Positions 2,569 to 63,405 of a stretch of 64,000 nt of DNA are shown piece by piece. Every line of letters starts with the position of its first letter. The stretch's first letter is position 1. The translations under genes were made by a program, and so were the position numbers. The stretch is taken from the NCBI GenBank assembly GCA_053919585.1, contig CM132813.1; one strand, given 5' to 3'. The notes beneath the pieces were generated by a model. That model made no database searches. It was not told the DNA's origin and was given only the letters and a program-made list of their open reading frames with translations. The stretch comes from Euprymna scolopes. Its lineage: Eukaryota.

Positions 2569-2755
2569 TCTTTCTGTGAAGGTACATTATTGCTTCAGTT
2601 ACCCGGCCGTTTTTTTTTGTTTTTTTTGCTGTCTGTGTCTTCCTCAGAATTTTACAGCCGTATAACATAATCAAATGCTGTAAAAGTCTGAAGAAGCTAC
2701 AAGCGGCCAAAAACCGGCCGGGTAGCTGAAACAATAATGTAACTTAACAGAAAGA
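2569..2755. repeat. Inverted repeat made of two head-to-head hammerhead-bearing units
   Basis: 2569-2658 is an imperfect reverse complement of 2677-2755 (tctttctgt..tacattattg.ttcag.tacccggccg versus cggccgggtagctgaaacaataatgta..acagaaaga). Confidence 0.85.
2678..2750 (+). ncRNA. Type I hammerhead ribozyme, core intact
   Basis: CUGAAGA 2688-2694; stem II AGCUAC/GUAGCU extended by CGGCC/GGCCG; GAAAC 2728-2732; stem III ACA-AUAA-UGU; GUA triplet 2739-2741; stem I AAGU/ACUU plus CUGU/ACAG across an internal loop. Confidence 0.82.
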
Positions 2756-3404
2756 CGCGGTAATNNNNNNNNNNNNNNNNNNNNNNNNNNNNNNNNNNNN
2801 NNNNNNNNNNNNNNNNNNNNNNNNNNNNNNNNNNNNNNNNNNNNNNNNNNNNNNNNNNNNNNNNNNNNNNNNNNNNNNNNNNNNNNNNNNNNNNNNNNNN
2901 NNNNNNNNNNNNNTTATTATCATTCTATTTCATATGATACAATATATTTATCACATGAGGAATATTTTAAATTTTGGGGTGCATGATTTTTTTACATATA
3001 AAAAAATCGACAATATTTACAAATAGATATTGTGAAATAGCGATAAACACCAAGAAAATAAAAAAATATTGAAAATAATGTAATTTGCATAAATGCATTA
3101 TGTTTACCATCAGGTTCTTCCTAGAAAATTTACAATATTGCCTTTTTTTAATTCGCATATTTAAATGCATGTATATCTTGACAGTTAATAATGGAGATTA
3201 ATCTATGGTTTGGATATATCTTAAATTGTTTTTCTTAAATTAATCGAGCCGTAAAATTATTGAAGTAACTTTAATAAGTGTTATGGTTGTGTTTTATTGA
3301 AAGAAATAATTTGTCTTTATTAATTTTAAGATACAGGGGAGGTGATTAAATCCGTTTTCTTTATTTTTTAAATATTTCTAACCATGAGGATGTTTTATAT
3401 CTTA

Positions 3405-3672
3405 TGGTTTCTTTTGTTTTACGGCATATCAACCCTTTTCTGGTTATTTAATGCCGAATCCAAAGATCCGGACGAAATGTTTTTTTAATAGAATATATTT
3501 GTTTTTTTCAAGTCGGTTTCTATTTAACCCATAGTCGGGACCCTTACAGGTCCTACCACTCCAGGTCAGAGTGGACCTGGGAGGAATGACAATTAAAGGG
3601 TGGCTCCACACTCCCCATATCCGCAAGCTGGGGCCTCGCCACTGGATATACTTTAAGTTCATATCCAGGACC
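3405..3672 (-). mobile_element. SINE-like short retroelement, family A (copy 1)
   Basis: Reverse complement of the elements at 36122-36411 and 56292-56561 (shared ggtcagagtggacctggga, tggctccac, ggcattaaataacc, gttgatatgccgtaaaacaaaa). Confidence 0.8.
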
Positions 3673-4879
3673 AATTTCTTAAGAACAAATACTTTTAATT
3701 TTCTTATATAGTATTACTGTTCCTCCGAATAAAAATAACACTAATAATAAAAAGTGTGAATAACATCATACTGTATCACAAAACTTGATTCCTGAACAAG
3801 TGTACAGATCGAGACATAGAACATCCTCGTATGTGTGTCATATTTTCTTTTTTTGATGTTAATTTTGACGTTTTATTTGAAAGTTAACAGAGGGTAAATA
3901 GTTTCCTACTCATCGCTTTTAATAGACATTTTCCTGTGTGTTTTCTTCTTTTTTATTAATGATATCAGTCAATATCAATAAACACAGACGGGGCTGGCCA
4001 GTCTGAAGGGAATTTATCAAAGAGAAGGCGCTGTTTATTAATGCAATAAACAGTTGTGTATCATTAAAGAGACTTCTTTTATCTAACGTTATAAGCTTTT
4101 TATATTATTTTATTTGAACTGAAATTTATTCATTCGCGAATTTTAAAGGCGTTTATTTTAAGAGGTCTATTATCAAAGAACTTGCCAAGGTATATTAAGC
4201 TAAAGAGAATGTTTGCTTGTGTAAGTCATTTTTGTGTTATTTTTTTTCATTATAATATTTTCTAAATTTCTAAACGACTATGGAATAAGCATTTGTTCTT
4301 AATTATTCGTCACAGTAATATGGACGGTAATGCATTCACTGTTAAAAACTGAGCGCGTCGCATCAAATGACTGGAACGTTAGACAATAAATTAACGCTGC
4401 TACATGTTTGGTTTATCATTTTTCTGCTCTACTATTTTTCAAATTTTATTTAATGGTGAATAAGAGATTACTCGAACTATTCTAATTTGAAGTTTTTATG
4501 AGCAAGTATGCCATTTCCGTATTGTGAGATTATAGGTTGCTTCTTGCTGGGAAAATAAAGAAGCAAGACGTTTTTGACAATTATGCTGTAATTTAGTGTA
4601 ACCAACACATATGTAGAAATCAAAAAAAGTTTTTTCTGATCTTTCAACTGATCATAAAGTTTATTTTTATGGGCATTACCAATCCAATCGAACAAATTTT
4701 GCCTAGTGCCAGAAGAAGGAAAGAATGAGATATACTGTTTTGCTTACAACTTACCTGGAAGTCTTAAATGCTTATTCTAAGCTTACAAACTTAGATACTT
4801 ATTAAAGGTGATATCTAGAATATTCCTACAACGTCATTTGCAACTTGTCTCGTCTCAAAGCATTGAACTGACTATAAAT

Positions 4880-5532
4880 GTTATTGTTCTTTCTTACTTG
4901 ATGTTTTCACGACATTTCTGCTAACTATATCTCGGCCCTTTGTCAGGTGGTAACCACGACGGAGTAGGAACTTCGAATCTGGTAACGGCATCCTCAGCAA
5001 TAACTACTTTCCGTAGGTCTTATCGTCTCACAACGTTTTCGCCAAGTAAGCCTCTGCCGTACTTTGGGTAGGATTGAAACCGCTACCTTCAGACAAATCT
5101 CACTCGTAACCGTAGAGATTCAACGTCTCTATGCAAAACGTCTCGGGCCCCGAAGGGCGATCAAGGTTGGATATTTTGGTCCTATAAATTCTCGTTGTTT
5201 ATTATCTGATCTTTCGTGGTCGGGTCCGTACTGAATGGTATATTAGTTGGTGGAATTCATTATTGAGGCGATTATTATTTATTAATTTTATTTTTATTGC
5301 GGGCTATTATCCTCATCTTTCTTAGTTGATGTTTTCACAGCGTTTCGACAGACTATGTCTCTGACTTTCGTTAATAAAAAACGGCGAGACTACAGCATCT
5401 ATGGAAAGCAGTAATTTCTGAGGATGCAGTTTTGAGATTCGGAGTGCCTATCCTGTTGCGGATACCATCTAACGTCGGAAAAACATAAAACTAAGACAGA
5501 TGAGGATAATAGTCCGCGATAAAAATAAAATT
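4880..5532. mobile_element. Decayed PLE-derived non-autonomous repeat cluster with an inverted repeat and relic HHR motifs
   Basis: Inverted arms at about 5284-5336 and 5478-5532. Minus-strand relics (cctgacaaag...cagaaatgtcgtg; tcgaaacgctgtg) resemble the 14101-14417 element. Confidence 0.55.
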
Positions 5533-6015
5533 CATACTATTATCGCGCAATACAATTTATTTTGCTCGCTTCGATGGTTCAGAATGCCGGTCTTGTACTG
5601 AAGAGATCGTATGTCTTAATAAAGAGAAACCAGATACGCATTTACAGTTACTCGTATTACATAAATCATTTGGACAACTGATCTCATCTTGAGTAGCATT
5701 TTTACAATATTTTTACGATGTAACCTCAGCCATTCTTCAGATGTATCTTACAGAACTCATGAATATGCACATAATTTTGAACCAGAGAAACATGTTCCCG
5801 TTCCGTCAGCCATGAGTGCATAGACGCCCTATGTAATTCAGGATTGTATTTTAAGTCCCCGATTAAGGGATTAATTTTAAAGCTTCATAAAATATATCTC
5901 ATTTTACTTAATGTTTCCAAGTATTCTAACCACAAGTTCTTGCAAATAATTCTAGTATTTTAAACGTCTACTACCTATCTTATTCCTAGATGTAAATATC
6001 ATATATATATATATA

Positions 6016-6056
<41 letters not shown>

Positions 6057-6519
6057 CTAACTTACTTACTTACAAGTGGTAGTCACACAGATCACAATCA
6101 AAGATTTCTCTTTGAGACCAGCATGTGACCGTCTCAGAAATCGTGGTCACAATAAGTCTCTCAGATTTCTAGTATTATCCACCTCTTTCTATAACCACTG
6201 AATATCAACGTTTTTTATCGTAACAGTCGCTTACCATTACATCAACTGCTTGATTGAGGGCCGATAACGGTGCACACAAAGGAAACTTCACATTCCTCCC
6301 CTGCAGTTATTTTGTCCAGATTGCATTGCACTGTAAAGAACCTACTGTTAATTTTATAAAATTATTTTGGAATATAACGGTTTGAAATAAGGTTTAAAAT
6401 GTTAAAGTCAAAGCATTTTTTTTAAGTTAAATATTTTTGTCGATCTATATTATATTATTATTTAAAAAAACAAAATCTTCTCTTCATTTTATACACTTCC
6501 CCTTTCTGTTTATGGGGGG

Positions 6520-6914
6520 ATAATCGCTGAAAATTAAGAGTTATGAACTATTGTACTTTTAACATAAACATTTACTTTAAACGCGCACGTGCCATATCAA
6601 ATAACTATTCATTTTATATGTTACGCATTTCTACTTGTGTGGAAAGAAAACTTTTCAGATTCAGTTGAAATGTAAGGGTATACATGATGCACATATTTGT
6701 ACAAATGGCTGGTTGATGTCTTTATAGGATTATTTGGTTATAGATTATCTACACCTATCTACAATATTCCCATACAAAGTATACTTTAGAACACTGCCAG
6801 ATATATAAAGTACATATATGTAAATTTTCATAAAAATCGGATCAGCTATTGTAGATTTTATGGAAATCGAACCCGCGCACATACGCAATATTCCTTTTTA
6901 TATATTAGTAGAGA
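6520..6914 (-). mobile_element. Helitron/Helentron-like non-autonomous element, 5' part
   Basis: Minus strand starts A|TCTCTACTAATATATAAAAAGG, followed by ...gatccgatttttatgaaaatt, a common non-autonomous Helitron 5' pattern. The same 5' start occurs at 59500. Left boundary approximate. Confidence 0.5.
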
Positions 6915-7329
6915 TTTTTCTTTGTTCTATTAAGATAGATAGTTTCCATTTTTCCTACATACATTGTCCAGCGTAGCCGACATTTGAAGATCTACAAATA
7001 ATATAACTTTAGAAATTATTTTCTAATATTAGTGTTACGGAACGATACTTGTCACTTTTGCATAGTTTATTGGGGGAGCTGTGTTATGATCTTTCGAGTG
7101 TTGTCTTGGACGTAAGATTCCCTTAAACAGTTCATTCCGTCTTGATATGTATTGCTGTCACTACATATTGCCTTTATCAGCTGCTGGACGCAGCATACGG
7201 TTTCTTTCTTTTCATTATATGCAGGATGAAAGTTGAAGTTAAGCACTGCCCAATGGAAGTTTATAGACGAAACAAGCCCCTGGCCATTGCGAGTTATTAG
7301 CTCAGCTATGCACGATTATTTGTTATTGT

Positions 7330-10585: not shown

Positions 10586-10621
<36 letters not shown>

Positions 10622-10641
10622 GTGTCTTTAAAAGCCCCACC

Positions 10642-10756
10642 CAATATTTTTGCTGATGAGACGTTGTTTCAAAAACCAAATGATAAAATTATTGTCCAAT
10701 CCTTATTGTCAATCTCAATAAAAACATCGTTTCCGAAACGATCGTACAATTTATTG
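10642..10756 (+). ncRNA. Type I hammerhead ribozyme with unusually long stem/loop II
   Basis: CUGAUGA 10653-10659; GACGUUGUUU pairs imperfectly with AAACAUCGUU around a roughly 50-nt loop; GAAAC 10735-10739; palindromic loop III GAUC; GUA 10744-10746; stem I UUG/CAA plus CAAUA/UAUUG. Confidence 0.68.
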
Positions 10757-13700
10757 ATTTTGTTTGTTCTTCCTTGTGAAACCGATTCCTGTTTAAAAAT
10801 GTTTAAAAAAAAAAAAGATGATACTAAACAAATAGCGGAGTCAGCTGACCGGTTTCGCTTTCGTTTTATCAAAGCTCTATCGAGGGATTTGTTTAGAGAA
10901 AAAAGAACACGAATGGGAATCGAGAATATGTACCAATAAAATCACGTTGTGTTACGTAATGTAAGGGGAAAATGCGGGAAAGACATTGAAAAACTGCAAC
11001 GTTATATTACTCGAAGTTCCTAGAGACTAATCACGCTCAAACCTACGAAACATTCCGTTTACAGATGAAAATACCTTCTCAACAGAACGTGAACAGTCTC
11101 CCAGATATTTAAATGAAATAATAAGTAAGCATGACTCAGCATGTAAAAAGGATTCGTGCTAAAGTTGTCTGCGCAAGATGTTTTTTTTTATTATAAAATG
11201 TTAGTAATTGAAGACCCGTATGTATCGGCAATTACCTCTGTTTTTATGTATGTCACATTTCTGATTTGTGTAAGTTCGAGTTGTGGGAATCTTCGATTGT
11301 GTTTGTGTTTATCGGATTTTTGGATGTATATGTGTTTGCTTTTACTATTATATCAGAAACTCCAAGACGTTATTTTATGCATTTCATAAAATCTTTTGTA
11401 GTGTGTTGATTGAGTTTGTAGAAAGCCAGGATATTGTTTAAGTTTAAGGGTCAGCGTTTGCTATTATTTATTATTGCTGTTTAAAGTATGCTGTTTAACT
11501 ATTTCAAAAATCCATGCACTTGCATGAAATATATTTACAATTTTTCTGTGTATACATTGTATTAATTAAAAGAGGGGATGATATTCCACGCGTTTACATC
11601 GTAGATTTTTTCATGTAGGGCAGTTACACTCATGTCGCATTACGGGACTATCCACGGGTATATTCCTTATGAATGTGAGCCACCATCGGCATCATAGTTT
11701 TATAAATATTTGTAACATCAAACAGTTTATTAATAATATGATTCCGTAATAATTAAACTTAACGTTTAATAATATATTATTAAACGGTAAGTTAAATTAT
11801 TACGATATTGCGAACATTAAATTAGCACTAAATTAATAATGATTTGATATGAAATTAGTTTATTTAATCATTTAACGATATAACAGTAAATATCTTTAAA
11901 TTTCCATATTATTTAGATAAACTTGGTAGACGAATACAATCGAAAAGGCGAAATTAAGACGAGCGCTATCAACAATGATTACATTTGTAATTGAGAAAAT
12001 CTTTCTCAAGAGACACTAAAATATGATGTGACGTGAGGGAATCTTTTTTTATGTGACTATTAATCCGTTGCGGATCTTTTATCAAACATTAAATATTTTA
12101 TTGGCGAAATGTTGTATGAATTATTTTCGCATAAAAACGAATGCAATATTTATAGCTTTGATAAAATGATATTAAGCATTAACATATGATAGACTGATTC
12201 AATTATAAATGCATAACTGTCCTTATAAAAACTATTTGAATGGTTTCATTCGGAGGAGACCTTATCGAAGATAAGCAAATACGTAAGACGAAAGGGTTAC
12301 GGGGTCATTATGCTTCGGATATTTTCGTTAAAATCCGTTTAGCATACGTTGTAGCTGATAATGCATTGTTTACACACGATTAGAGTAAAAACTGATTACA
12401 CAAACGACAGAATGGGCTATTCGAGCGCAAATATACTTTGACATACTGTGCTTAATCATGTCATTAGGTCCATTAATTACTTATTAATAAACTATCGAGC
12501 ATTTCATGGTAAACTGCATAAAGACCTTAAGATATCGCGACAAGATTATTAAGTTATTACATTTCTTCAAATATTATGCTGAAAGATCATCGTTTTAACA
12601 CTCAAACATCAGCAAATTATTCATGGGTAAAACAAACATTTCAGTTAATTATTGACTTGCAAATTAAGCTTCAATCATAATAGTCCAAGTGTCCAATGTG
12701 GTATAATGGATTATGTATACATTGCCATATCTAAATTAACATAGCGCAATACTTTGCTAGTCCTAAAATAGTATTAAATATATATTTATGGCAATCCTGC
12801 TACATGGAAACATTAAACAATCAGATAAAATTTTTGTTAATAAATATTTTGCTATAAAATATAAAAAAAATATAAAATAAAATAAATAAAATTATTTGCA
12901 GTCCTTTAAAGGAAGGTTTTTGTTATTTGTAATTATTTACATTTGTATTTTTCCGATTTAATTGTTTTTAAAGCGTCTGTTACGACGCTCGACTTAAACC
13001 GATGATTGCCGGTCTTATCCGATCAATGACTGACCGGAATTTCCGAGAATCCGGGTAAAAATTATGCAAGGGTATCGAATATTTAAAAATAAAGCAAAAT
13101 ATCTTTCTGTCTACACGAAATTATTTTTCACGCAAGGAACATCGTGCGATTACCAAATTAATGCGAATATTTTTTTTTTATCTTTCGAACTTCCGAACAT
13201 ATAAAAAACCATCAGGGGAAATAACTCTACTCGTTACATATAAAAATCGATGTCGGAAGTAATACTTTAAAATAAATTTAATTAAATATATTATCAATAT
13301 AATTGTTATTTAGAGTTGATGAAATAACAATTTTAAATATAACACTTAAAACAACTCTTCCCTAGAAACTTAAACTAACATACAGCTATCCATAACAATT
13401 TATTTTCCTTAATATAATAGACAAATGAGGTGACCTCTTAATCGTATATTTTTAAAGAATCATACTATATAAAGAAATAAATGAAATACTAAACTAACAG
13501 ACATTTTGTATATATTAATCAAAATGTAAACAAACAAAAACAAACAAATAGACAGGAATACGACTTGTAATATATATTTATGTATATATATATATATATA
13601 TATATAGATATATATGCTTTTAATTTATTCACCCGAATTTCTTTTTTTTTTTAAATGTGGATGGTATTTATTATAGAGGTCGTATTCTGTATACAACCTA

Positions 13701-14100: not shown

Positions 14101-14417
14101 TAGTAAGTGTCTGTATTTTTTAGATGAGGTGTTTTCATTGATTGAGATTGTCGGACTGACTTCCTCATCTTGGTTGTTATAGTCACAACGTTTCGGCCGG
14201 TTTGCCCTCCGGCCTTCATCGGGTGTTTTGTATCGAACTGAGGAACCGTTTGTTAGGAGTCTCGAACCGAACCCTTTATCATAATTATTACGGGGATACC
14301 GTGTTCGGACGCCAGCTAGGCTCTGGGACATAGTTGCTCATTCTCTGTTCAGAACGACAGAAACGTTGTGACTATAACAACCAAGATGAGGAAGTCAGTC
14401 CGACAATCTCAATCAAC
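14101..14417. mobile_element. PLE-derived non-autonomous insertion with inverted arms, target-site duplication and near-intact HHR
   Basis: Perfect 57-bp inverted arms 14138-14194 and 14360-14416; 11-bp direct repeat cataatctcat at 14090-14100 and 14418-14428; minus-strand CAC-CCGAUGA-A-GGCCGG..CCGGCC-GAAAC-GUU-GUG at about 14184-14225. Confidence 0.8.
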
Positions 14418-16727: not shown

Positions 16728-16729
<2 letters not shown>

Positions 16730-16765
<36 letters not shown>

Positions 16766-20463: not shown

Positions 20464-21685
20464 TCTATTAGTAAAACTTACCATCTGATTTCTGAATAAG
20501 TGTCATTTCCGTTCTTGTTCTTATGAAACTAAAGCACATTTAAATCTGGATTTATTACGAACAAAGTAGTAATAAACTTATGTTTATTACTACTTTTTTC
20601 GTAATAAATCCAGATTTAAATGTGATTTAGTTTTCATACCTTTATATTTCAAACGATAGAATCGTTAAGGTACAACTCTCATGTCTATGGTAAATTTTCC
20701 AGTTTTCACTTCTATTCCTTTGCCAAACCTAACTACAAATTTCTTTTAAAGCAAGGAGCCGTACCGTTTATTCTCTCAACATTCCAACATTTCCTTTCAA
20801 AATTCGCTCTTGCAGTCAATTTAAAACTAGGTTTGTGGTTGCGTCTGGAGTATTCACTCCTCGCGGGATAGCCAGTAAAGTAGTTTCTCCAATATGAACA
20901 CTTGGTCGATAATAATTATTCATCCATGCATATTAATTAGATTAAATGATTTCTGTTTAGTTCCGACGGGCTACCATTGCATCGAGGTCACTCGAAAATC
21001 ATTACTTCTTTGGAGTCGAAATGATAATTTACTGATATCATCTGATATTTAATAACAACTCGACAATTCTGTCATGTTCAATTGTTCTAGCTGGAGTAAA
21101 CACTATATTTACATTTACCACTTAACACGCACTCCGACAAGTTCAAAGGTTTTATACTGTAATTGTCTTAATAGCACATGACAGCCAACAAGTTTACATG
21201 TATGGAATCATAACACGGTTATTGGTACATTGAACTACGTTTAATAAGTGCTGGTATTTTATTTTTTTCATTAATTGAATGTTCAAATCTATTAGTAAAA
21301 CTTACCATCTGATTTCAAAATCAGTGTAATTTCCTTTCTTGTTCAGATGTTCTCTTTCCGTAAGAAATCCGGATTTAAATGAGTTTTTCTTTCAATACTT
21401 TATATTTCAAACGATAGATTCTTGTGTCATCGGTCAATTTTCCAGATTTCTTTTCTCCAGGTATGCCTATAGTTTTATCCTTTCCATTTATGTCTCTGAT
21501 AAATTTTCCAGATTTTTCGTCTCTTGTCAAACCTGAGTAACAATTTCTCTTAAAGCAAGGAACCGCACCGTTTATTAAAACGCTCTGTAATACTGTAATA
21601 GTGTGACTAGCACATGCCAGCCAACAAGTTTACACATATGGAATCATGGGACGATTGTTGCTCCCTTTTACTACGTTTAATGATA
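20464..21685. repeat. Imperfect local tandem duplication (about 20464-21250 versus 21288-21685)
   Basis: Shared blocks in the same order: tctattagtaaaacttaccatctgatttc, tttatatttcaaacgataga, aaagcaagga, tagcacatg.cagccaacaagtttaca. The second copy lacks an internal segment. Confidence 0.8.
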
Positions 21686-22278: not shown

Positions 22279-22318
<40 letters not shown>

Positions 22319-22861: not shown

Positions 22862-23304
22862 TAAATTCTGAAAACAGCAACCTAAAGACACATATATTCG
22901 ATTTAAGAATGTATTGTTTGATAAAAGGAATACATATAAAGGGTTATGTTAATTTCCTTAATCCATATATATGAAATGCGGTTCGCATTTTTTTCCATAT
23001 AAATATCCATAACCACTCAAAAATCTATTTTCAATAATTGTGCTGAAAAGCAAAATAAGCGTCCATTCGCTAACATTTTGCTAACCGCATTTCATTTTCT
23101 CTGATGATATGCGCCATTATTGAAAATCCATAGATTAAGGAAATTAACATTACCCCTTCTATATATTCCTTTGTCAAACAATAAATTCTTAAAGCGAATA
23201 TATGTGTCTATATGTTGTTTTTTCAGAATTTAAAATTTAACCACCAAACTTATATATTGCTCTATTCTTAAATATTTAGCTGTTCCTTTTTGGCTAGGAT
23301 CACC
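22862..23304. mobile_element. Fold-back MITE, probably Tc1/mariner-derived; left end in gap
   Basis: About 100-bp imperfect inverted arms 22862-22963 and 23133-23232. The right end ggatcacc resembles a CAGGGTGATCC-type TIR. Confidence 0.65.
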
Positions 23305-49049: not shown

Positions 49050-49165
49050 GATCTCGTGGTCTGGTGTTAAGACATCAGGCTACATATCCAGCGGTGGTGA
49101 GTTCGAGTGTCAATAAGTTTTGCTATACTGACGAGCATTTAAACTTCGAAACATATAGACAACTT
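49050..49165 (+). mobile_element. tRNA-headed repeat followed by a hammerhead relic (SM-alpha-like)
   Basis: A-box-like TGGTCTGGTGTT (49057), B-box-like GAGTTCGAGT (49099), CUGACGA 49128-49134, CGAAAC 49147-49152, stem I CUAUA/UAUAG plus AAGUU/AACUU. Cleavage triplet missing. Confidence 0.62.
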
Positions 49166-49211
49166 AATTTTATGCACTTGGAAAATATTTCAATGAATAT
49201 TTAAATAATAG

Positions 49212-49268
<57 letters not shown>

Positions 49269-50205: not shown

Positions 50206-50272
<67 letters not shown>

Positions 50273-50801: not shown

Positions 50802-51798
50802 TAGATAGATATAGAAATACCCGTTCACTTTTCACGATAAAGCTAGAACCCAGAATTAGATAGAATCGAGCAATTGCATCGACAACGGACAACGCCAGAT
50901 CCAAAGTGGGGTTCATCTCATCAGTGACGTGCTCCAACGTAGGCGCTAACCCAGGTGATCGCACGCATGGAGTGTGCAATGCTGGAGCCCTAACCAAATG
51001 GGCCACGGCGCAATCTATAGGCTATGCCTCGATTTTTAAATTCTTATATCTTTTATCCAGTTCTACATTCTACGATGCTACAAGCAACGCGTCCTGTACA
51101 ACTAAGATAGTTACTGCTGGTATGGAGGCGGTAGATATCACCTCTACAAACATTAACTGAAATAAGCCGACTCTCCAGATACGATTTCGGAAGAACCTAT
51201 TTGTTGAGGGGCATCACGTACTACGAAGGATGAACCGCTTTTTCTACACATATTAGACATTATGAGATTATAGATAGATATATAAATACCTGTTCACATA
51301 CACCTTTTACGATAAAACTAGACCCCAGAATTAGAGAGAATCGAGCAAATGCATCGACAACAGACAATGCCTGGTCCAAAGTGGGTTCCTATGTACTGCA
51401 TCTCATCAGTGATGTGCTCCAATAAAGGCGAGAACCCAGGTCGTCGCACGCATGAAGTGTGCAATACTGGCAACCTAGCCATATAGGGCAGGGCGCAATC
51501 TATTGGATATGCCTCGATTTTTAGATTCTTATATTTTTTATCCAGTTCTACATTCTACGATGTGATAAGCAACGTGTCCTATACAACTCAGACAGTTACT
51601 GCTGGTATGAAGGTGGTAGATATCACATCTACAAACATTAACTGAAATTATCCGACTCCCCAGACACGATTTCGGAACAACCTATTTGTTGAGGGACATC
51701 ACGTTCCTACAAAGGATGAACCGCTTTTTCCACACATATTAGATATTATGAGGAGATTATAGATAGATATGTAAATGCCCCTTTCACATACACTTTTT
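50802..51798 (-). repeat. Tandem repeat of about 480-bp units (469 bp, 489 bp, partial third), each with a tRNA-like head and CUGAUGA core
   Basis: Units start tagatagatat at 50802, 51271 and 51760. Minus-strand A/B-box-like motifs are followed by CUGAUGA at 50924-50918 and 51409-51403. Confidence 0.8.
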
Positions 51799-52570
51799 AA
51801 AAAATATTTATATCTATAATCAATGTATACAGTATACATAAATCATCTGACTATATTTTAGATATGAATGTAAAATTCTTCCCCATCATATCACACTATA
51901 GCTGTCATAAATATTTAATTATTACATAAACATTTTAGTATAAAGAGTAGACTATTTTATTTTGTTTGGTGAGTTGTCGAAAATGTTATTANNNNNNNNN
52001 NNNNNNNNNNNNNNNNNNNNNNNNNNNNNNNNNNNNNNNNNNNNNNNNNNNNNNNNNNNNNNNNNNNNNNNNNNNNNNNNNNNNNNNNNNNNNNNNNNNN
52101 NNNNNNNNNNNNNNNNNNNNNNNNNNNNNNNNNNNNNNNNNNNNNNNNNNNNNNNNNNNNNNNNNGCAGCCAAACTACAATGCTCATATTTTGTAAATAG
52201 ACAAACACTTATTTGTTTAATATTATTTATAATGTCGATCTAACACTCTTTTTGCAGAATAAATTTTCGTCTTATATTGTTAATAAGAGGAAACATTCAA
52301 TAGAATAACGTAGGTCTTTTTAACAGTGATATATATTTTTCTGTCCAGGAGTTGACATTTAGCGCATGTAGTTTTAAATGGTAAAGGATGTGTTCTCTTT
52401 GACAAAAGTGTGGTTTGTTGTTTATAATCGAATATACGGTTTATGGTCTTATTAAAAGTAAAGAGTTATATCACTGCTAAGACTTATTTTTCGGATAATA
52501 CAAGTATAACATTTAAAATCACTTGCACTAATCGTCATTTCCAGACACACACACATACACACACACACAC

Positions 52571-52621
<51 letters not shown>

Positions 52622-53559: not shown

Positions 53560-53626
<67 letters not shown>

Positions 53627-54587
53627 CCTAATCATTTGCCTCATTGTTGAAATTGACTATTTTACGATACCCGAGATCAGATTGTAGGTCCAGAGAATAT
53701 ATATAAAATATCGTCTTTTTTCTGCGCGAAATTATATAGAAAATCGGATTGTTCAAAGATAATAATATTCAAAGATATTTAAACATATATTATAGGTTAC
53801 ATCAATTCTTTGTTTTAGTGTATCATAAATTTAACTGTCGGTATATTGCTAAGTAGCTAAATGATCAAACATGTTTTCTTTCAAATATTTCTGTATATGT
53901 TTAATACAACCTACTTGTTGTATCTTGAAAGAAAATTACCGCTGCATCTTTTATTGCAAATATTGGTTGAATATGTAATCGGTTAAATACCCGATTTACT
54001 CGTCGGCATTACTCAGAAAACTGAGAGAAAACAAATACTAAAATGCAATATGTGATTACTATGTAATGCTAACAAGGTTTAATGTGTTAACATTATTTTG
54101 ATCGAAATAATTACCTAACTGCTTGGGTCAGTGCCGTACCTTGTATGATTACTGTTTTTCGTTTTTTTTAAAAAAAAGGTCACGTATTATTCTATTATTT
54201 TATTTCGGAACTGGCCATAAAAAAATTACACTTATTGTTTTACAGTAATTTCGTATTTTGGCTAAATAATATATATTGATATTTTAGTCTGTATTTATTA
54301 TATTATTAATATCATAATATTTAAGTAACAGTATTCGTTTTGCTGTATAATACGTGATATTGCTAGAGGCATACTATATGTTACACACGGTAAAAAAAAT
54401 ACCCAGTGCTTTAAACAAACTAAACAGGTTTCTATGTTAAGTCTGTGTACATTTATAATATATTTTATTTAGGATTGATTATTGGGTGTTACACGAGAAA
54501 AAGTGCTATCGTTAGGTGTAAAAAATAATAAGAAACATTTTCCAAAATTGTGTATACGTATTTATGATAGCCGTGAGCTTTGATTGC

Positions 54588-55165
54588 GGGTTAATTTATT
54601 TGTGGCCGAGCAGGACACAATTTGTTGGGGGTAAATTTATTTCTGGTTGAGCAGAACACCATCTATTTGGGGTTAATTTATTCCTGCTGTGGCAGTACAC
54701 CATCTGTTGGGGGTTAATTTATTTCTGCTGGAGCAGTACACAATTTGTTGGGGGTTAATTTATTTCTGCTGGAAGAGTACACCATTTGTTGGGGGTTAAT
54801 TTATTTCTGGTTGAGCAGTACACCATTTGTTGGGGTAAATTTATTTCTGGTTGAGCAGTACACTATTTGTTGCGTGTAATTTATTTTTGGTTGAGCAGTA
54901 CATAATTTGTTAGGGGGAAATTTATTTCTGGTAGAGCAGTACACCATTTGTTGGGGGTAAATTTATTTCTGGTTGAGCAATACACAAATTGTTGTGGGTA
55001 AATATATTTCTGGTTGAGCAGTACACCATTTGTTGGGGGTAAACTTATTTTTGGTTTAGCAATACACCATTTTTGGGGGTAAATTTATTTCTGGTTGAGT
55101 ACATTATTTGTTGGGGATTGATTTCTTTCTGGTTGAGCAGTACTCTATTTGTTGGGGATTAATTT
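54588..55165. repeat. 41-bp minisatellite, about 14 copies
   Basis: Consensus gggggttaatttatttctggttgagcagtacaccatttgtt, head to tail without spacers. Confidence 0.95.
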
Positions 55166-56291
55166 AGATATGTGGCGTTTTAAATCGAGTTGTAGCCTAA
55201 GTTTTGACAGAAAGATGTTAAATGTCTTACATTTTTATATTACCGCACAATCTGGTGAATCTTACGTATTTAAATGCCCCCCGGTAATCTTCGTAGCAAA
55301 TCTTCATAGGCTGTGATTTAGCGAATAAATTTTATACCTATTAATTTCAACACATTTTTTTCAGCGATAAAGTCATTTCATTCAGTCACATGAAACTAAT
55401 CCAGACGTCGGGAAGTGTAAAGTAATTACGTTCTTTTCATGTTGAATTACGCAGATATTTTTTACAAGGTTAAATCTGTGAAGATTTCTCAGAAAAATAC
55501 ATTCTAACTATTAAAGTGCGTAAGCGTCTTTACTGTACTAACCTTAAAGCGAAATAAGAAGAAAAGTAAATTGAAGTGCTGAAATTAGTCTTAAATTTCT
55601 GCTCTAATAAAAGAAGTATATGCTTAGAGATTTGATATCTTCTTTAGATATATAAAGTATTTTATGAGATGAAATAAGATATGCTTTTCGCTAGCAGAAA
55701 GAAGATAGATAAAGAAAAGAAAGCAAACGGGAACTATAACATTGTTAGTGTACAACAAACTAAATAAACTATGGCATATGTCAATGTAAGGAGATAACCA
55801 ATGAAGGGAATCTTTAATCAATGGACACATCAGCGTGCGTCATAATTTTTGTTTTAAATCAAATAACTCATACTTCAGATTAAAAAACAATAACTAGCAA
55901 ACGTAAACTCAATTTATTCTGGACCATTTGTTTATATTTTCTTGATATTATTATTTTAAGTGATATTTATTTGATATTAATAGTCTGTTCATGTGAGTAT
56001 TTGTATTTGAGTTAATTTCTCATACAGCCGTCTATAGGGTTTAGGTTGTATCCAATCTGAACTTTCTCTCCAAATCATATTAATAAATTATTGAAAGGAT
56101 AGAAAGTATCTCATCGTATTGAAATTTAAAATTACCGTTTATCCACCAGACCATTTTGTTTATACAAAGGTTCATTATGAGTTTGTTAACGCTCGATTCT
56201 ACAAGAAATAGAAACCTTCAATAGAAAGACGAAGAGTTGTACATTAACTCATATATTTGAAGGCTAACAAAACATGTTCATTTGATCTCTG

Positions 56292-56561
56292 GTCCTGGAT
56301 ATGACCTTAAACTATATCCGGTAGTGAGGCACCAGCTTGCAGGCCTTAGGGAGCGTGGAGCCACCCTTTAATCGCCATTGCTCCCAGGTCCACTTTGACG
56401 CGGAGTGGTTGCACCTGTTAGGGTCCCAACTATGGGTTGAATAGAATGCGACTTAAAAAACAAATATACTATATTAAAAAGATAGTTCTCCAAAATCACC
56501 AGATTCGGCATTAAATAACCTGAAAAGGGTTGATATGCCGTAAAACAAAACAACCAGTCAA
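56292..56561 (+). mobile_element. SINE-like short retroelement, family A (copy 3)
   Basis: 14-bp TSD tcatttga(t/c)ctctg at 56278-56291 and 56562-56575; colinear with 36122-36411. Confidence 0.88.
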
Positions 56562-57056: not shown

Positions 57057-57110
<54 letters not shown>

Positions 57111-59370: not shown

Positions 59371-59499
59371 TTTCCGTAATCCAAAGAGCAAAAACCCTCT
59401 TAATCAATTGTAGAAATCCATTCAAAGAGCGTAATAATTTTGCCCAATTAATTGAGGGTTGGAACGTATTCGTAGAATTGTTAAATATGAACAGTTATA

Positions 59500-60173
59500 T
59501 CTCTACTATTTTCCATATAAAAATATATGTGTGTATGAGTGTGCGAATTCGTTCTCTATAAAATCCGTAACGACTGGGCTGATTCTTGGGATATTTCATG
59601 CAATGTCTTTAGTGTATATATCTGAGAGTGATCTTAGTTCACTTTTGTCTAAGAATGCTCTGGTAATTCCCGATAATCCATAATCCAAACCGTTATTTTA
59701 ATCTATCTGTCATCGGTAACACAATTTTCCATTTCGTCGCTTAGCAACAAGAATAGAACAACGGGCCATGAAAATTCTACAGTGGGTAAGTTGATATCCC
59801 GGTTTTTTTGTTTTTTTATTTATTTTTTTATTTTTTGCATAAGATGGTCTACAGGTCCAATATCCGCACGTAAATTTCTGTTTTTTTTCATTAGCTCCAA
59901 AGAATTTAATTAGACTTGAAAATTTAATTGTTTTCTTTTCTTGTTTATTTTTATTTGGTTTGACGTTGTCTGTAAGTTAATATAGTAAATTTCGTAATCT
60001 TTTTTTACCAACTGGAAAGAGGTATATATAAAATAATTTGATAAAGGAAAGGGTCCGTTCTCTAAAGTGCAATGTAGAATAACATATGTTTTGGACAAAG
60101 TTACTGCCAATAAAAATAAAAGATTGTAAAATATTCGTTGGCTATCAAATTCAATCCTGGGTTCTCCCTGCTA

Positions 60174-60174
<1 letters not shown>
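59500..60174 (+). mobile_element. Helitron-like non-autonomous element
   Basis: Starts A|TCTCTACTA (as at 6914) and ends CTAG at 60171-60174, immediately before (TA)n. Confidence 0.5.
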
Positions 60175-60243
<69 letters not shown>

Positions 60244-60582
60244 TGTGAAGTAGTCTCATATCGGAGACATATAATACAGATGATGTACATCGGAGTACGT
60301 ATATATCGGAAGCCGAGACACTTATATAGCGACGACGATGACAACCTTGTTTGTATAACGCTGTAAACGGCGGCGACGGTGACGGTTCTATTTATTTCGT
60401 ATTATTATGATGAGGAGACATATTAATGTAAGAAGAGAGATGTTGAATACAGTTTTTTTTTTAACTCATTAGAATGGAGGTAACTCCTTGATGGTAGCGT
60501 AGGGGAAAGACAGTTTTAACTTGAAGGGCATTGTACGACGTTCGTTTAAAAGATGATAGACAAAAACACATTAACTTGCAGT

Positions 60583-60880
60583 TGTTATTAAGACACGAAG
60601 ACCAACAGTTTACAAAATATAGATAGTGATTTTTTATTCGTCCAACCCTCTGAAGGATGAATTAGAAATTCTAGTTTTACGGCTACGTGGTCTCCTCTCC
60701 CCGCTTCGTCTACAATTACGTCAGTTCCGACTCATTTCTTTCTCACTAACTCGAGCCCATTTCAATATATTGGAATCGCCCCTTCTTTATGTCGTCGGAG
60801 GCGTGGTCAGACAATGTAACACCCACCCGTTTCAAATTATACGTGCGCTTTGCTCAGGCATTCACAGGCCTATGGTAACA
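60583..60880 (-). mobile_element. Possible solo LTR
   Basis: TGTTA...TAACA termini, higher GC, minus-strand AATAAA near the 3' end. No TSD found. Confidence 0.35.
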
Positions 60881-61312
60881 AAGAAATTCCTTAATTAATT
60901 GTTTCATTTCTAACCTATGTGTTTATCTTTAATTTCTAAACTGCATTGTTCATATCTAACTCTTACATGAATAGTACTTCGTTATTTCAAAAAAAGCACG
61001 ACACTCGTAATAGGATATCAATGTGTATCCTTTTTTAATTTTCCTACTGGGTTCGATTCTAACCGTTTACAAATATAATTTTCAACTTATGTACTTTTCT
61101 CTTAATTACTGGGGTCTGGCCCTTTTTACATAACACGCACACACACATATATGCATATATATATATACATTTATGTTTATATATGCATATGCATATATAT
61201 GTATATATGTATGTAAGTCGGTATGCATGCATGCCTATATGTGTATATATACGGGTACATATACATATATGTATATATATATATGTGTATGTATATATAT
61301 TTCCATATATGT

Positions 61313-62395
61313 GATCGGGTGGCTCATACGAGGGCTGATATGCAGCATCTTGTGGACGCCTTTGGGGGTGCATGCAGCACATTGGGTTTGGCTATCAATC
61401 TGAAATAATATATCAGCCTGCACCATGCATTCCATTCTATGAGCCTTCAGTTTATATCTATAAGTCAAAAATGGCGGTTGTCGCTTAGTTTGTATACTTG
61501 GGTAGCACACTAAGTATGTCTGGACAAACGTTTGCGGAGCTGTCATTGGATATCGCTACCCACAATGATTAAGGTGTATGCCGCACGCGTCCTCTCTGCT
61601 TTCTCTTTGCCTGTGGGACTTGGACAACATACATGACGCATTTGAGACGTCTTGAGCGGTATCAGAAGATGTGCCCACGGTGAATCTTAGGTGTTGGCTG
61701 GCAAATGTATGTCAGCGATCTTGAGGTACTGTAACGACCAAATGTCTAAGCATTGAGGTTGTCATTATCAAACATAGGCTGAAATTGTTTGGTCTTGTTG
61801 TAAGGATGTCAGACAGTCAACTTCCCAAACAACTTCATGGCGAGCTCGCCGAAGGAAGGCGTCTGGCTCAAAAAGCTTAAATGAGATTCAAGGATTGTTT
61901 GAGGTTCTCCTTAAAAAATGTGAGACGGATGAGAGAATCTGGGAGAGTCTTGCTATGGATCATGGAGAGTGGAAAGGTACCCTGCGATGAGGTGTGGGCT
62001 AGTTTAGTCTGATCGAATCCAGTATGATCAGCTGAAACGTGATATACGGAAAGGGAAGGTACAAGAAGCAGTGGATGAGCTGGGACGCCAAATTAGTTTA
62101 GAGCGTGAGGTGTGCGGGAGATTATGTCGGAGCAGAGCTAACCCGATAAGCCATAAGACTACTCATCAGCGCAGTGGGTCACAAAACAGTCTTGTGTTGC
62201 CAGATCTAACCAGTGTGAACTGCGGGCGGACGTGAAAAAAAATGGCGGTTGAAGCACATTTTAATATTCCTAGAAGTGACCATTTAGAACGTGTTGCTAG
62301 TGGCGCTCATGTCTGCACAATGTGTGCAAATGAACGCCAGAGTTTGGCAGGGCGTAAACACAATCTTTGCGCGCCCCATCATTATTTGTTTTAAT
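61313..62395 (+). pseudogene. RTE-clade non-LTR retrotransposon, decayed 3' fragment
   Basis: VAHTRADMQHLVDAFGGACSTLGLAINLK, FVYLGSTL, GTWTTY, VVRMSDSQLPKQL.GEL, and C-terminal C2H2-like motifs (EVCGRLCRSRANPISHKTTH). Confidence 0.85.
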
Positions 62396-62398
62396 GTT

Positions 62399-62461
<63 letters not shown>

Positions 62462-62519
62462 TTATATGTGCTATATCAATAATGACAATGTTGGAAAACG
62501 AATTAAAATGAATTTGCTA

Positions 62520-62550
<31 letters not shown>

Positions 62551-62740
62551 GTATACATTGTTATATGCTAAATTGTAAATTAGTAGTTTTTAACTTCATT
62601 ATTATGAGTATATTTCTCTTTTAAAATAGTATACTTCAAATCACATTGAAGTTTTATCTGAATAATGAAAGAATGACTGCTTCATGAACATTCATTTTTC
62701 ATTATAGACATGTTTTAGTACATTATTCAGCATGGATGCT

Positions 62741-62795
<55 letters not shown>

Positions 62796-63125
62796 TAATG
62801 ATAAAATTATTTGGTAAAATTGGACATTCAAAATGAGCAATATCGATTTGGTAAATCGATTATTTTGAAAAGGCAAATTCATAAGTTTTTGGCAACGTCC
62901 GTGTCGGGTGCGCCTCAGTAAAATGTGCATACTGTTTGAAGTAGTCTCACGAAAAATCTAAGGAAATACTTCAAAGACGGTGGAGCGGGTTCAACGGGGA
63001 AAGTATCGCATTACCTTTTTTTAAAGAACAAGGATTATTTCAGAGAAAAATACGATCTAAGGATAATATCAGGACATTTTAACAAATATGCATAAAGTCA
63101 TACACATATTAACATATTATCATGT

Positions 63126-63186
<61 letters not shown>

Positions 63187-63188
<2 letters not shown>

Positions 63189-63403
63189 CCGATATGGGTA
63201 GGATTCTAACACTGTTTTCCTTTCATTTTCGTATAGTCTATGATCATTTTCTTTTTTTTTTGCATTTTTCCTGTTAATATCCTGAAGATATCCACTGCAA
63301 TAGGGAGGAAACGATGATTATTTTATGAATTCATTCGCTTTCGTTTTTTTTTCTTTTTTCAAAACAAGATAACGTCAACCATCGCTGTATTTTTTTTATT
63401 TTT

Positions 63404-63405
<2 letters not shown>
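63187..63405 (+). mobile_element. HHR-bearing short repeat, family C (copy 2, core mutated), embedded in (TA)n
   Basis: CUGAAGA 63282-63288 and GAAAC 63308-63312, followed by GAU instead of GUU. TA tracts on both sides. Confidence 0.72.

What the first reader, a model, noticed from the sequence alone, without database searches (positions are those of the whole stretch)
2569..63405. Window-wide set of hammerhead-ribozyme repeats tied to (TA)n tracts and a Penelope-like RT: candidate retrozyme system
Seen: hammerhead cores or relics in at least six unrelated repeat families (2678, 10642, 10840, 14184, 29149/48451, 34002/63275, 41790, 49114, 50918/51403). Most are within about 250 bp of a (TA)n run and several are in inverted pairs. 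A PLE RT sits at 264-2367. Established: PLEs carry minimal type I hammerheads and generate inverted terminal repeats, and metazoan non-LTR retrozymes are thought to be mobilised by PLEs. Inference: this genome hosts a diverse, possibly uncatalogued set of self-cleaving non-autonomous retroelements that insert into or generate TA microsatellites.
Basis: partly seen in the sequence, partly recalled or inferred. Interest (0 to 1): 0.85.

Follow-up and report, generated by a model that had tools for sequence, protein, structure and literature searches.

The report
Hammerhead-carrying Penelope-type repeats in TA microsatellites
This stretch of a very large mollusc (probably cephalopod) genome is littered with copies and wrecks of at least six high-copy, non-coding jumping elements that carry a hammerhead self-cleaving RNA motif and mostly sit in (TA)n microsatellites, the known landing site of Penelope-like retroelements; it is a real but already known kind of element in a host where it seems undescribed.

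Summary
Observation mostly holds. Other genomic copies of each family carry a complete type I or minimal hammerhead at the same place.

- Two window copies are still complete: 2678-2750 and 34002-34049.
- The rest are mutated or deleted relics: 10653, 14222(-), 63282, 49128, 50918(-), 51403(-).
- Three groups fail. 29149/48451 is a repeat with no hammerhead. 41790 is single-copy DNA. 10840 has only a half core.

Rfam finds none of the window sites. It scores an unrelated canonical family elsewhere in the genome at 53-57 bits, and one window family weakly (HH9, 22-27 bits, in its genomic copies).

The families are a Penelope-like element (PLE) 3' end, units with tRNA-like box motifs, a palindromic unit and a tandem dimer. 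Inverted 5'-truncated partner copies and (TA)n or (CA)n at the ends are the published PLE insertion signature. The RT at 212-2382 is a dead, endonuclease-less PLE copy and not the partner of these families.

Self-cleavage and circular RNA were not shown. The kind is known (PLE min-hammerheads, animal retrozymes, Sm-alpha type). These are new members, and this scan has already reported the same on other DNA of this genome.

The parts
212..2382 (-). Decayed Penelope-like element copy. The N-terminal region and RT lie in three reading frames. The sequence stops at the start of the GIY-YIG endonuclease, which is missing.
   Evidence: ORF pieces at 2382->1963, 1966->1493, 1616->324 and 394->212. 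Pfam RVT_1, E=1e-9. 3,573 homologues; P0016 is 54% identical and has RT plus a C-terminal GIY-YIG. There is no EN and no (TA)n downstream.
2427..2482 (.). (TA)28 between the 5' end of the PLE copy and the fam3 element. The PLE-containing segment lies between two outward-facing fam3 copies, each bordered by (TA)n.
2483..2764 (+). fam3: a roughly 300-bp unit built of two inverted arms around a variable centre, bordered by (TA)n. Its right end is cut by the assembly gap at 2765. A complete hammerhead lies at 2678-2750, with core CUGAAGA at 2688, an A-U closing pair on stem II, a 3-bp helix III, and predicted cleavage after A2741.
   Evidence: Descriptor hit. 2,116 or more genome candidates at 80-87% identity. 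In 6 aligned copies the core is conserved with N7 = A or G, and 5 of 6 loci carry a complete motif, some on both arms.
10622..10800 (+). fam6 copy starting at a (TA)n tract. It carries a hammerhead with a roughly 75-nt stem II insert: CUGAUGA at 10653-10659, GAAAC at 10735-10739, the palindromic helix III ACGAUCGU at 10738-10745, and A17 at 10746. Stem II is damaged in this copy.
   Evidence: Two other copies (L058, L062) conserve both core halves. L062 passes the full descriptor. Both end in (TA)n or (TG)n.
10826..11100 (-). fam9 repeat ending in (TA)n in other copies. Only a half core is conserved (GAAAC-CG-GUC, with UUGAUAA upstream). It is not accepted as a hammerhead.
   Evidence: 1,431 or more candidates; alignment of 10 copies.
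14101..14416 (-). fam2: a SINE-like element of about 350 nt with box A/B-like motifs, plus an inverted 57-bp copy of its own 3' part abutting its truncated 5' end (14360-14416). The minimal-hammerhead relic has core CCGAUGA at 14222-14216, a U4-to-C change.
   Evidence: 1,975 or more candidates at 94-96% identity. Of 24 other copies, 16 have a complete motif with CUGAUGA or CUGACGA. In RNA-library contigs the family majority reads A at 14221, i.e. CUGAUGA. The inverted arm is 100% identical.
33896..34104 (+). fam1: the 3'-terminal part of a C-terminal-endonuclease PLE, starting at (TA)n 33853-33895 and cut by the gap at 34105. A complete minimal hammerhead lies at 34002-34049: CUGAAGA at 34009, a bulged U, a 5-bp stem II, GAAAC-GU-U, and a 3-bp helix I.
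63187..63402 (+). Second fam1 copy, lying between (TA)n 63128-63186 and (TA)n 63408-63462. The hammerhead relic has its core at 63282-63288, stem II is broken, and ACGUU has become ACGAU.
   Evidence: 2,038 or more genome candidates at 86-89% identity. Longer copies continue upstream into a GIY-YIG-like coding stretch.
34813..35611 (+). fam4 repeat with no hammerhead, ending in (TA)n 35555-35611. In locus L004 its homologue shares a (TA)n tract with a canonical hammerhead element.
29149..29386 (.). fam5 repeat terminus, duplicated in inverted orientation, directly next to (AT)30. A second copy lies at 48440-48966. It has no hammerhead.
49023..49213 (+). fam7: an element with a box B-like motif and a canonical type I hammerhead in other copies. 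In the window copy (core CUGACGA at 49128-49134) stem II is mutated and a 9-nt deletion has removed helix III. It abuts (TA)n 49214-49267.
   Evidence: 543 or more candidates. Alignment of 14 copies; 5 pass the full descriptor, with N7 = C or U.
50802..51799 (-). fam8: a head-to-tail dimer of a unit of about 485-500 bp (85% identical), starting at an assembly gap. Each unit holds a hammerhead relic downstream of box A/B-like motifs, with CUGAUGA at 50924-50918 and 51409-51403. One relic has a 10-nt deletion and the other has a mutated GAAAC.
   Evidence: Genome copies have a complete motif with helices of 6+3, 4 and 5 bp and a GUC site. Rfam Hammerhead_HH9 scores 21.8-26.7 bits in 6 of 8 copies.
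41823..41829 (-). Lone CUGAUGA in single-copy DNA: a chance match.

Best explanation
The window is a transposon graveyard of a 5.9-Gb mollusc genome. From its size and its roughly 46 large contigs the host is probably a decapodiform cephalopod.

Its hammerhead-like sites are copies of at least six separate high-copy families of Penelope-like-element (PLE) sequences or PLE-dependent non-coding elements:
- the 3' untranslated end of a PLE with a C-terminal endonuclease (fam1);
- short elements with Pol III box A/B-like (tRNA-like) motifs (fam2, fam7, fam8);
- a two-armed inverted unit (fam3);
- a unit with a long stem II (fam6).

Each family's master sequence carries a type I hammerhead. It is either the 'minimal' PLE form (bulged base before stem II, 3-bp helix I, palindromic ACGU in place of helix III) or a full three-helix form.

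Likely working (inferred from the published model, not shown here). The elements are transcribed, by Pol III where a tRNA-like head is present or as read-through or tandem transcripts. The hammerhead, acting as a dimer in the minimal forms, trims the RNA to unit length. A PLE reverse transcriptase and GIY-YIG endonuclease encoded elsewhere then copies the RNA into nicked DNA, preferentially (TA)n and sometimes (CA)n. This leaves 5'-truncated, tandem or head-to-head inverted copies.

Shown here:
- family membership and copy number;
- complete motifs in the families;
- compensatory changes between families;
- microsatellite ends and inverted partner copies;
- PLE-type coding sequence upstream of fam1.

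Inferred: transcription mode, cleavage, circularisation, and which PLE mobilises which family.
For: Families and copy numbers:
-.

Complete hammerheads:
- The homologous place in genomic copies carries a complete motif under one fixed descriptor.
- The share of fetched loci with a complete motif is 21/29, 16/24, 5/6, 5/14 and 6/8.
- Chance gives about 0.05 per 62 kb on both strands.

Sequence variation:
- The only freely varying core position, N7, is the one that varies within families: U/C, A/G, C/U.
- Between fam1, fam2 and a third family, all 80 pair cells of helices I and II pair. 4 of 8 pairs show changes on both sides, and slid controls pair at 19-44%.

Rfam:
- A seventh, canonical family scores 53-57 bits. 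It forms 410-bp tandem arrays in which a tRNA-like match (27 bits) lies about 10 nt upstream of each ribozyme.
- fam8 gives HH9 hits of 22-27 bits.

PLE link:
- A GIY-YIG-like coding stretch lies upstream of fam1.
- The RT homologue P0016 has RT plus GIY-YIG.
- About 9 of 29 fam1 loci have inverted partner copies. fam2 has them as well, and fam3 carries motifs on opposite arms.

Microsatellites:
- fam1 3' ends carry (TA)n in 20 and (CA)n in 4 of 29 copies, against a 5-6% baseline.
- In the window, 5 of 7 insertions lie within 250 bp of a tract (P=0.005).

Literature:
- PMC4209133 describes the bulged base, short helix I, palindromic helix III, opposite-strand pairs 100-700 bp apart, and mostly single truncated copies.
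- PMC8557442 describes (TA)n targeting and tandem/inverted insertions.
- PMC7229834 describes animal retrozymes.
Against: - No Rfam hammerhead model reports any window site, or any copy of fam1, fam2, fam3, fam6 or fam7.
- Minimum-free-energy folds do not return the three-way junction, and their z-scores are unremarkable at -1.9 to +1.0. The fam3 stretch that was folded (z -9.4) forms the long inter-arm hairpin, not the junction.
- Helix I of fam1 and fam2 is only 3 bp. PLE min-hammerheads cleave poorly in vitro (PMC4209133).
- A fam2 variant with CCGAUGA occurs in about 6 of 25 copies. Either an intact core is not needed for spread, or this is recurrent change at one site.
- The covariation rests on only three lineages.
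- ARAGORN calls no tRNA in any head. Rfam tRNA is sub-threshold even in the canonical family, and absent from the fam2, fam7 and fam8 copies searched.
- No RNA ends could be read, because all available runs are held as contigs.
- fam2, and most of fam7, are not tied to (TA)n.
Confidence: 0.85

Rival explanations
1. The hammerhead-like motifs are inert fossils. The families are PLE-dependent, but the motif is kept only as part of the 3' recognition module for the reverse transcriptase, or as a hitch-hiker, and no longer self-cleaves.
For: - Helix I is very short and helix III minimal in fam1 and fam2.
- PMC4209133 reports low in vitro activity for PLE min-hammerheads.
- PMC8557442 notes that Naiads thrive without hammerheads and that these motifs may 'simply parasitize PLEs'.
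- The CCGAUGA variant of fam2 spread to several copies.
- The same hammerhead module appears with different flanks in RNA-library contigs (loose ends at 14164 and 14199).
Against: - Six or seven unrelated helix sequences all keep the 11 core bases and all three helices.
- Changes in helices I and II between families are compensatory.
- Within families only N7 varies.
- fam7, fam8 and the canonical family have full-length, stable helices.
Confidence: 0.2
2. The palindromic, (TA)n-flanked units (fam3, the fam5 pairs, 27903-28084) are miniature inverted-repeat DNA transposons of the Tc1/mariner type. These target TA, so the (TA)n link comes from DNA transposition and the hammerhead in fam3 is fortuitous.
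For: - The inverted-repeat architecture and direct contact with TA on both sides.
- Strong hairpin folding of fam3, z = -9.4.
Against: - The fam3 arms are unequal and the centre is variable between copies, as expected for a 5'-truncated inverted partner rather than fixed terminal repeats.
- The flanks are long (TA)n tracts, not a TA dinucleotide duplication.
- fam3 carries a complete hammerhead conserved in 5 of 6 loci, with only N7 varying. Chance gives about 3e-4 per element (my scaling).
- Opposite-strand min-hammerhead pairs 100-700 bp apart are described for PLEs.
Confidence: 0.07
3. Most of what the first reader saw is chance: short CUGAUGA and GAAAC words in AT-rich repeats.
For: - No Rfam hit in the window.
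- One-mismatch half-motifs are at chance level, 14 against 8-11.
- Three site groups were indeed chance or partial matches.
Against: Six site groups map to families whose other copies carry complete motifs at the homologous position, including families whose window copy is broken. The full descriptor finds 2 motifs against 0.05 expected.
Confidence: 0.03

Closest known systems
Minimal hammerheads (min-HHRs) of metazoan Penelope-like elements (Cervera & de la Pena 2014, PMC4209133)
   Same: - Type I topology.
- An unpaired base at the 5' end of stem II.
- A short helix I.
- A palindromic 2-4-nt stand-in for helix III, implying action as a dimer.
- Location in the PLE terminal repeat or 3' end.
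- Thousands of mostly single, truncated copies.
- Pairs on opposite strands 100-700 bp apart.
fam1 and fam2 fit point by point.
   Different: - The host: no mollusc is mentioned in that paper's main text.
- Stem II here is 5 bp, against 7-8 bp in schistosomes.
- Helix I is 3 bp, at or below the published 4-5 bp (2 bp in D. virilis).
- fam2 carries the motif inside an element with tRNA-like boxes rather than in a PLE.
Animal non-LTR retrozymes (de la Pena and co-workers 2020, PMC7229834; Li et al. 2026 preprint, 10.64898/2026.07.22.740005)
   Same: Short non-coding tandem units, each with a type I hammerhead, thought to be PLE-dependent. The window's fam8 dimer (units of about 485 bp) and the genome's 410-bp arrays fit this.
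   Different: - Circular RNA was not shown here.
- Most window copies are single, truncated and dead.
- The published hosts are cnidarians, mussels and amphibians or other vertebrates, not cephalopods.
Schistosoma Sm-alpha SINE-like elements (Ferbeyre et al. 1998, as cited in PMC4209133; the architecture is from my own knowledge)
   Same: A tRNA-related Pol III head directly followed by a hammerhead, in tens of thousands of copies. The canonical family, fam7 and fam8 place the ribozyme 10-20 nt after a T-arm-like box.
   Different: An unrelated host and unrelated sequences. The tRNA likeness is sub-threshold here (27 bits against a gathering score of 29; ARAGORN finds none).
(TA)n-targeting PLE clades: Neptune, Naiad, Hydra (Craig et al. 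2021, PMC8557442)
   Same: Insertion bias for (TA)n or (CA)n, no recognisable target duplication, and tandem and inverted composite insertions.
   Different: - The clade of the PLEs here was not determined.
- Naiads lack canonical hammerheads, and that paper calls cephalopod Naiads old remnants.
- fam1 has a C-terminal EN with the GIY...YIG core enclosing two cysteines.

Membership tests
Hammerhead ribozyme (type I, including PLE min-HHR) | Conserved core: C3 U4 G5 A6 N7 G8 A9 ... G12 A13 A14 ... A15.1-U16.1, and H17 not G | tested here: met
   Present in family copies of fam1, 2, 3, 6, 7 and 8. In the window it is intact only at 2688 and 34009. Elsewhere it is mutated: 14222 has U4-to-C, and 49128, 50918, 51403 and 63282 are damaged.
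Hammerhead ribozyme (type I, including PLE min-HHR) | Three helices around the core, supported by covariation | tested here: met
   All families give helices I/II/III under one descriptor. Between three min-HHR families 100% of cells pair and 4 of 8 pairs change on both sides. There are only three independent lineages, so the event count is small.
Hammerhead ribozyme (type I, including PLE min-HHR) | Match to the curated covariance models (Rfam CL00010) | tested here: not met
   No hit for any window site or for copies of fam1, 2, 3, 6 and 7. fam8 copies give HH9 at 22-27 bits, below the gathering score of 52. The genome's canonical family scores 53-57 bits. Published min-HHRs are also outside these models, since they needed their own descriptor.
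Hammerhead ribozyme (type I, including PLE min-HHR) | Site-specific self-cleavage | not testable with these tools
   All available runs are held as contigs, which carry no end information.
Penelope-like element (the copy at 212-2382) | PLE-type RT, joined to a GIY-YIG endonuclease in intact relatives | tested here: met
   RVT_1. The homologue P0016 is 54% identical over 96% of the RT piece and has a GIY-YIG domain at residues 575-613.
Penelope-like element (the copy at 212-2382) | Intact single ORF with endonuclease, and terminal repeats with a hammerhead (an autonomous copy) | tested here: not met
   There are three frames. The sequence ends at the first GIY-like residues. No hammerhead or (TA)n lies downstream for more than 1 kb.
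Non-LTR retrozyme | Head-to-tail units, each bounded by a hammerhead | tested here: met
   fam8 dimer at 50802-51799, with cores 485 bp apart. Genome copies of 1.1-1.2 units. The canonical family forms 410-bp arrays. The other window families occur as single copies.
Non-LTR retrozyme | Unit-length circular RNA in vivo | not testable with these tools
   Only contigs were available. No informative back-joints were seen.
tRNA-derived SINE (Sm-alpha type) | tRNA-derived head with Pol III A and B boxes | tested here: inconclusive
   Box A/B-like strings can be read by eye in fam2, fam7 and fam8. Rfam tRNA scores 27.1 bits (gathering 29) in the canonical arrays only. ARAGORN finds none.
PLE-mediated integration | Microsatellite target, 5' truncation, tandem or inverted partner copies | tested here: met
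   fam1: 20 (TA)n and 4 (CA)n of 29 3' ends, variable 5' ends, and inverted partners. fam2: inverted 3' fragments joined to the truncated 5' end. fam3: (TA)n on both sides. Not met for the microsatellite feature in fam2 (1 of 24).

The most novel reading that the evidence does not exclude
Penelope-type integration may not only use (TA)n but also seed or lengthen it. The telomerase-related RT would add or template dinucleotide repeats at the junction. PLE activity, together with tens of thousands of hammerhead-bearing passengers, would then drive the very high (TA)n density of this genome (30 tracts in 64 kb). The bulged, 3-bp-helix-I hammerheads would be a distinct, functional cephalopod variant that cleaves only in tandem or dimeric transcripts.
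Probability: 0.1. Interest if true: 0.7.

Novelty: new member of a known kind. Interest (0 to 1): 0.35.

Why it matters
**Annotation.** Curated RNA models miss most hammerhead-bearing repeats in this genome. Five of the six window families get no Rfam hit at all. Ribozyme and retrozyme censuses of large invertebrate genomes are therefore probably undercounts.

**Study material.** The families give a natural series for studying what the motif does for Penelope-dependent elements. It runs from full three-helix to minimal forms, with N7 the only varying core base and compensatory helix changes. They also offer a way to study why these elements home to (TA)n.

**Cephalopod genomics.** These families, and the microsatellites they occupy, appear to be repeat classes that standard libraries may leave unclassified. 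This is inference; I did not check any repeat library.

**Limits.** The mechanism and the class are already published. This scan has reported the same elements several times on other DNA of this genome.

Tried and rejected
- **Rfam at three sensitivities.** It found no hammerhead in the window. I first read this as 'mostly chance' and dropped that reading once genomic copies were aligned.
- **Strict and loose motif scans.** My first strict scan missed real relics, and the loose scan was at chance level.
- **MFE folding of single copies.** It gave no three-way junction and no useful z-scores, so it is uninformative for short AU-rich motifs.
- **ARAGORN on family copies.** No tRNA was called.
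- **One combined covariance model.** MAFFT put stem II of bulged and unbulged families in different registers. A model built from the families' own copies would only re-find homologues, so no model was built.
- **RNA evidence.** All 24 runs are stored as contigs. Laying four of them showed that the fam2 family is abundant in RNA-library contigs while this locus's flanks are silent. There was no end or junction information.
- **fam9 (10840) as a U3-A8 core variant.** Rejected, because no stem II lies between the core halves.
- **Link between the window's RT and fam1.** BLAST of the window against about 211 kb of fetched loci, including the long fam1 copies, gave no match inside the RT copy.
- **Clade assignment of the PLEs.** Not possible without reference sequences.

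Full report
**Setting**

The window is G000:C31:59706001-59770000 of a 5.9-Gb assembly with 925 contigs. It is AT-rich and holds twelve assembly gaps. It has 30 (TA)n tracts of eight or more units. Runs sharing words with it include 'mollusc metagenome' RNA libraries. The genome size and the roughly 46 large contigs suggest a decapodiform cephalopod, which is inference.

**Step 1: is the observation there?**

Rfam gave no hammerhead in the window at gathering score or at E<=10. It also gave none when the twelve claimed sites were searched alone as small loci, although a control ribozyme from the same genome scored 52 bits in that search.

CUGAUGA occurs 14 times against 6.3 expected. A half-motif (core, stem II, GAAA) occurs twice exactly (0.3 expected). 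With one mismatch it occurs 14 times (8-11 expected), which is no better than chance.

On this evidence alone the finding looked weak. The genome itself, however, has a strong canonical family. There were 73 scored Hammerhead_1 hits of 42-57 bits out of about 900,000 first-look candidates. They include 410-bp tandem arrays, one of which starts directly at a (TA)n tract.

**Step 2: what are the sites?**

I searched the genome with the DNA around each site and aligned copies.

*fam1 (33896-34104 and 63187-63402).*
- 2,038 or more candidates at 86-89% identity.
- Longer copies continue upstream into a coding stretch with a GIY...YIG core enclosing two cysteines, followed by about 400 bp of untranslated sequence. 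fam1 is therefore the 3' end of a Penelope-like element with a C-terminal endonuclease.
- Its motif is CUGAAGA, a bulged U, a 5-bp stem II, then GAAAC-GU-U and a 3-bp helix I.
- The element ends in an A/T-rich tail followed by (TA)n in 20 and (CA)n in 4 of 29 copies.
- About nine loci have a second, inverted partial copy within a few hundred bp.

*fam2 (14101-14416, minus strand).*
- 1,975 or more candidates at 94-96% identity.
- It is an element of about 350 nt with box A/B-like strings. Its motif has the same architecture as fam1 but unrelated helices: CUGAUGA, a bulged A, stem II GGCCG/CGGCC, GAAAC-GU-U, and helix I CAC/GUG.
- The window copy reads CCGAUGA. 16 of 24 other loci have a complete motif, with N7 = U or C.
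- Inverted fragments of the element's own 3' part are fused to its truncated 5' end in several copies, including the window's 57-bp perfect inverted arm.

*fam3 (2483-2764).*
- 2,116 or more candidates.
- It has two unequal inverted arms around a variable centre, bordered by (TA)n on both sides.
- Its hammerhead is complete in the window (2678-2750), with N7 = A or G among copies.

*fam6 (10622-10800).*
- It conserves CUGAUGAG and CGAAAC-GAUC-GUA about 75 nt apart in three copies.
- One copy passes the full descriptor. The other two end in (TA)n or (TG)n.

*fam7 (49023-49213).*
- 543 or more candidates.
- It has a textbook motif: a 5-bp stem II with a GAA loop, a 4-5-bp helix III, a GUC site, and a helix I of 5+3 bp.
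- The window copy has lost helix III through a 9-nt deletion.

*fam8 (50802-51799, minus strand).*
- 2,409 or more candidates.
- It is a unit of about 500 bp, present here as a head-to-tail dimer.
- Genome copies have helices of 6+3, 4 and 5 bp and a GUC site. They give Rfam HH9 hits of 22-27 bits in 6 of 8 copies.
- Both window units are damaged.

Three groups fail.
- At 29149/48451 (fam5) the window's CUGAUAA lies in the variable junction of an inverted duplication and is not shared by other copies.
- 41790 is single-copy DNA.
- At 10840 (fam9; 1,431 or more candidates) only the GAAAC-CG-GUC half is conserved.

**Step 3: is it more than chance?**

One fixed descriptor finds a complete motif in representatives of all six families and the canonical one. 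It finds two in the window. 800 composition-matched simulated windows gave a mean of 0.05-0.06, and none had two.

The descriptor also picked up further, untargeted hammerheads in the random flanks of fetched loci (L049, L082).

I aligned fam1, fam2 and a third family. All 80 pair cells of helices I and II form standard pairs. Four of eight pairs change on both sides. Sliding the partner by 1-3 columns drops pairing to 19-44%. Only three lineages are involved, so this is a handful of events, not a statistic over many.

**Step 4: the (TA)n link**

In the window 20% of positions lie within 250 bp of a tract.

At family level the link is strong for fam1. It is also visible for fam3, fam6, fam8 and the canonical family. 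It holds equally for families without a hammerhead: fam4, fam5 and fam9. It is absent for fam2 (1 of 24) and weak for fam7. The link therefore belongs to the integration machinery, not to the ribozyme.

Short fam1 and fam3 copies have the repeat on both sides. That fits insertion into an existing tract.

**Step 5: the RT**

The sequence at 212-2382 (minus strand) is RT-like in three frames. Its close homologues number in the thousands. One of them, 54% identical, has RT followed by GIY-YIG, so it is a PLE.

The window copy stops at the first endonuclease residues. It has no hammerhead or (TA)n downstream. Nothing inside it matched the fetched loci, which include the long fam1 copies. It lies in a (TA)n tract between two outward-facing fam3 copies. 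It is a dead passenger, not the driver.

**Step 6: comparison with what is known**

- Cervera and de la Pena (PMC4209133) defined PLE min-hammerheads. Their features are an unpaired base at the 5' end of stem II, a short helix I, a palindromic stand-in for helix III, mostly single truncated copies, and opposite-strand pairs 100-700 bp apart. fam1 and fam2 match this description.
- Craig et al. (PMC8557442) document (TA)n and (CA)n targeting and tandem/inverted insertions of PLEs.
- Animal retrozymes are described in PMC7229834. They are argued to be PLE derivatives in a 2026 preprint.
- A tRNA-like piece followed by a hammerhead is the Sm-alpha design (my own knowledge; cited within PMC4209133).
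- I found no paper in the library pairing hammerheads with cephalopods.
- Earlier notes of this scan on other DNA of the same genome reached the same reading.

**Limits**

- Self-cleavage, circular RNA, Pol III transcription and the identity of the mobilising PLEs are inferred.
- All public runs offered were contigs. Laying four of them showed only that the fam2 family is abundant in RNA-library assemblies, that its majority reads CUGAUGA, and that the hammerhead module recurs with other flanks.
- The gaps after 2764, after 34104 and before 50802 cut three copies. No motif spans a gap, and I filled none.

**Verdict**

This is a real feature and a known kind with new members.

Noticed in passing
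window 27903-28084: A 180-bp near-palindrome (87% self-complementary) sits exactly between two (AT)n tracts (27861-27905 and 28113-28161). It may be another head-to-head element pair. I did not check it for a hammerhead or for genome copies.
   Followed up: no
window 47124-47288 (-): A sub-threshold U2 snRNA match (32 bits, gathering 46, full model length) lies inside a locally repeated region (46669-47217) that also matches several fetched loci. It may be a U2-derived pseudogene or repeat.
   Followed up: no
window 23504-23692 and 24907-25095: A 189-bp inverted repeat pair, 97% identical and about 1.2 kb apart, looks like the terminal inverted repeats of a young DNA transposon. 22862-22966 and 23130-23232 form another inverted pair (88%).
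   Followed up: no
window 20522-20638: A 117-bp near-perfect hairpin (93% self-complementary) produces spurious plant-miRNA matches in Rfam. It is probably a miniature inverted-repeat element.
   Followed up: no
window 54579-55166: A tandem array of a 41-bp unit with 14.5 copies and about 83% matches. It has no link to the hammerhead families.
   Followed up: no
window 3405-3671, 36123-36389, 56290-56556: Three copies (83-86% identical) of a further repeat of about 270 bp, also present in locus L087. It was not classified.
   Followed up: no
L005 1501-3044 (G000:C8:10432194 onward): An array of at least nine 410-bp units starts directly after a (TA)n tract. Each of the four units scanned has a 53-bit Hammerhead_1 match, and three of them have a 27-bit tRNA-like match ending about 10 nt upstream. 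This is the clearest retrozyme-type array seen here.
   Followed up: partly
L049 2964-3011 and L082 587-637: Two further complete hammerheads from other families turned up by chance in the flanks of loci fetched for other reasons. This suggests a genome-wide density of roughly one complete motif per 100 kb.
   Followed up: partly
window 14164-14199 (loose ends): RNA-library contigs share the fam2 hammerhead core segment but continue into different sequence on both sides. They also have a different stem II loop and a C-to-U change that keeps a G-U pair. The ribozyme module seems to be shared among several element families.
   Followed up: partly
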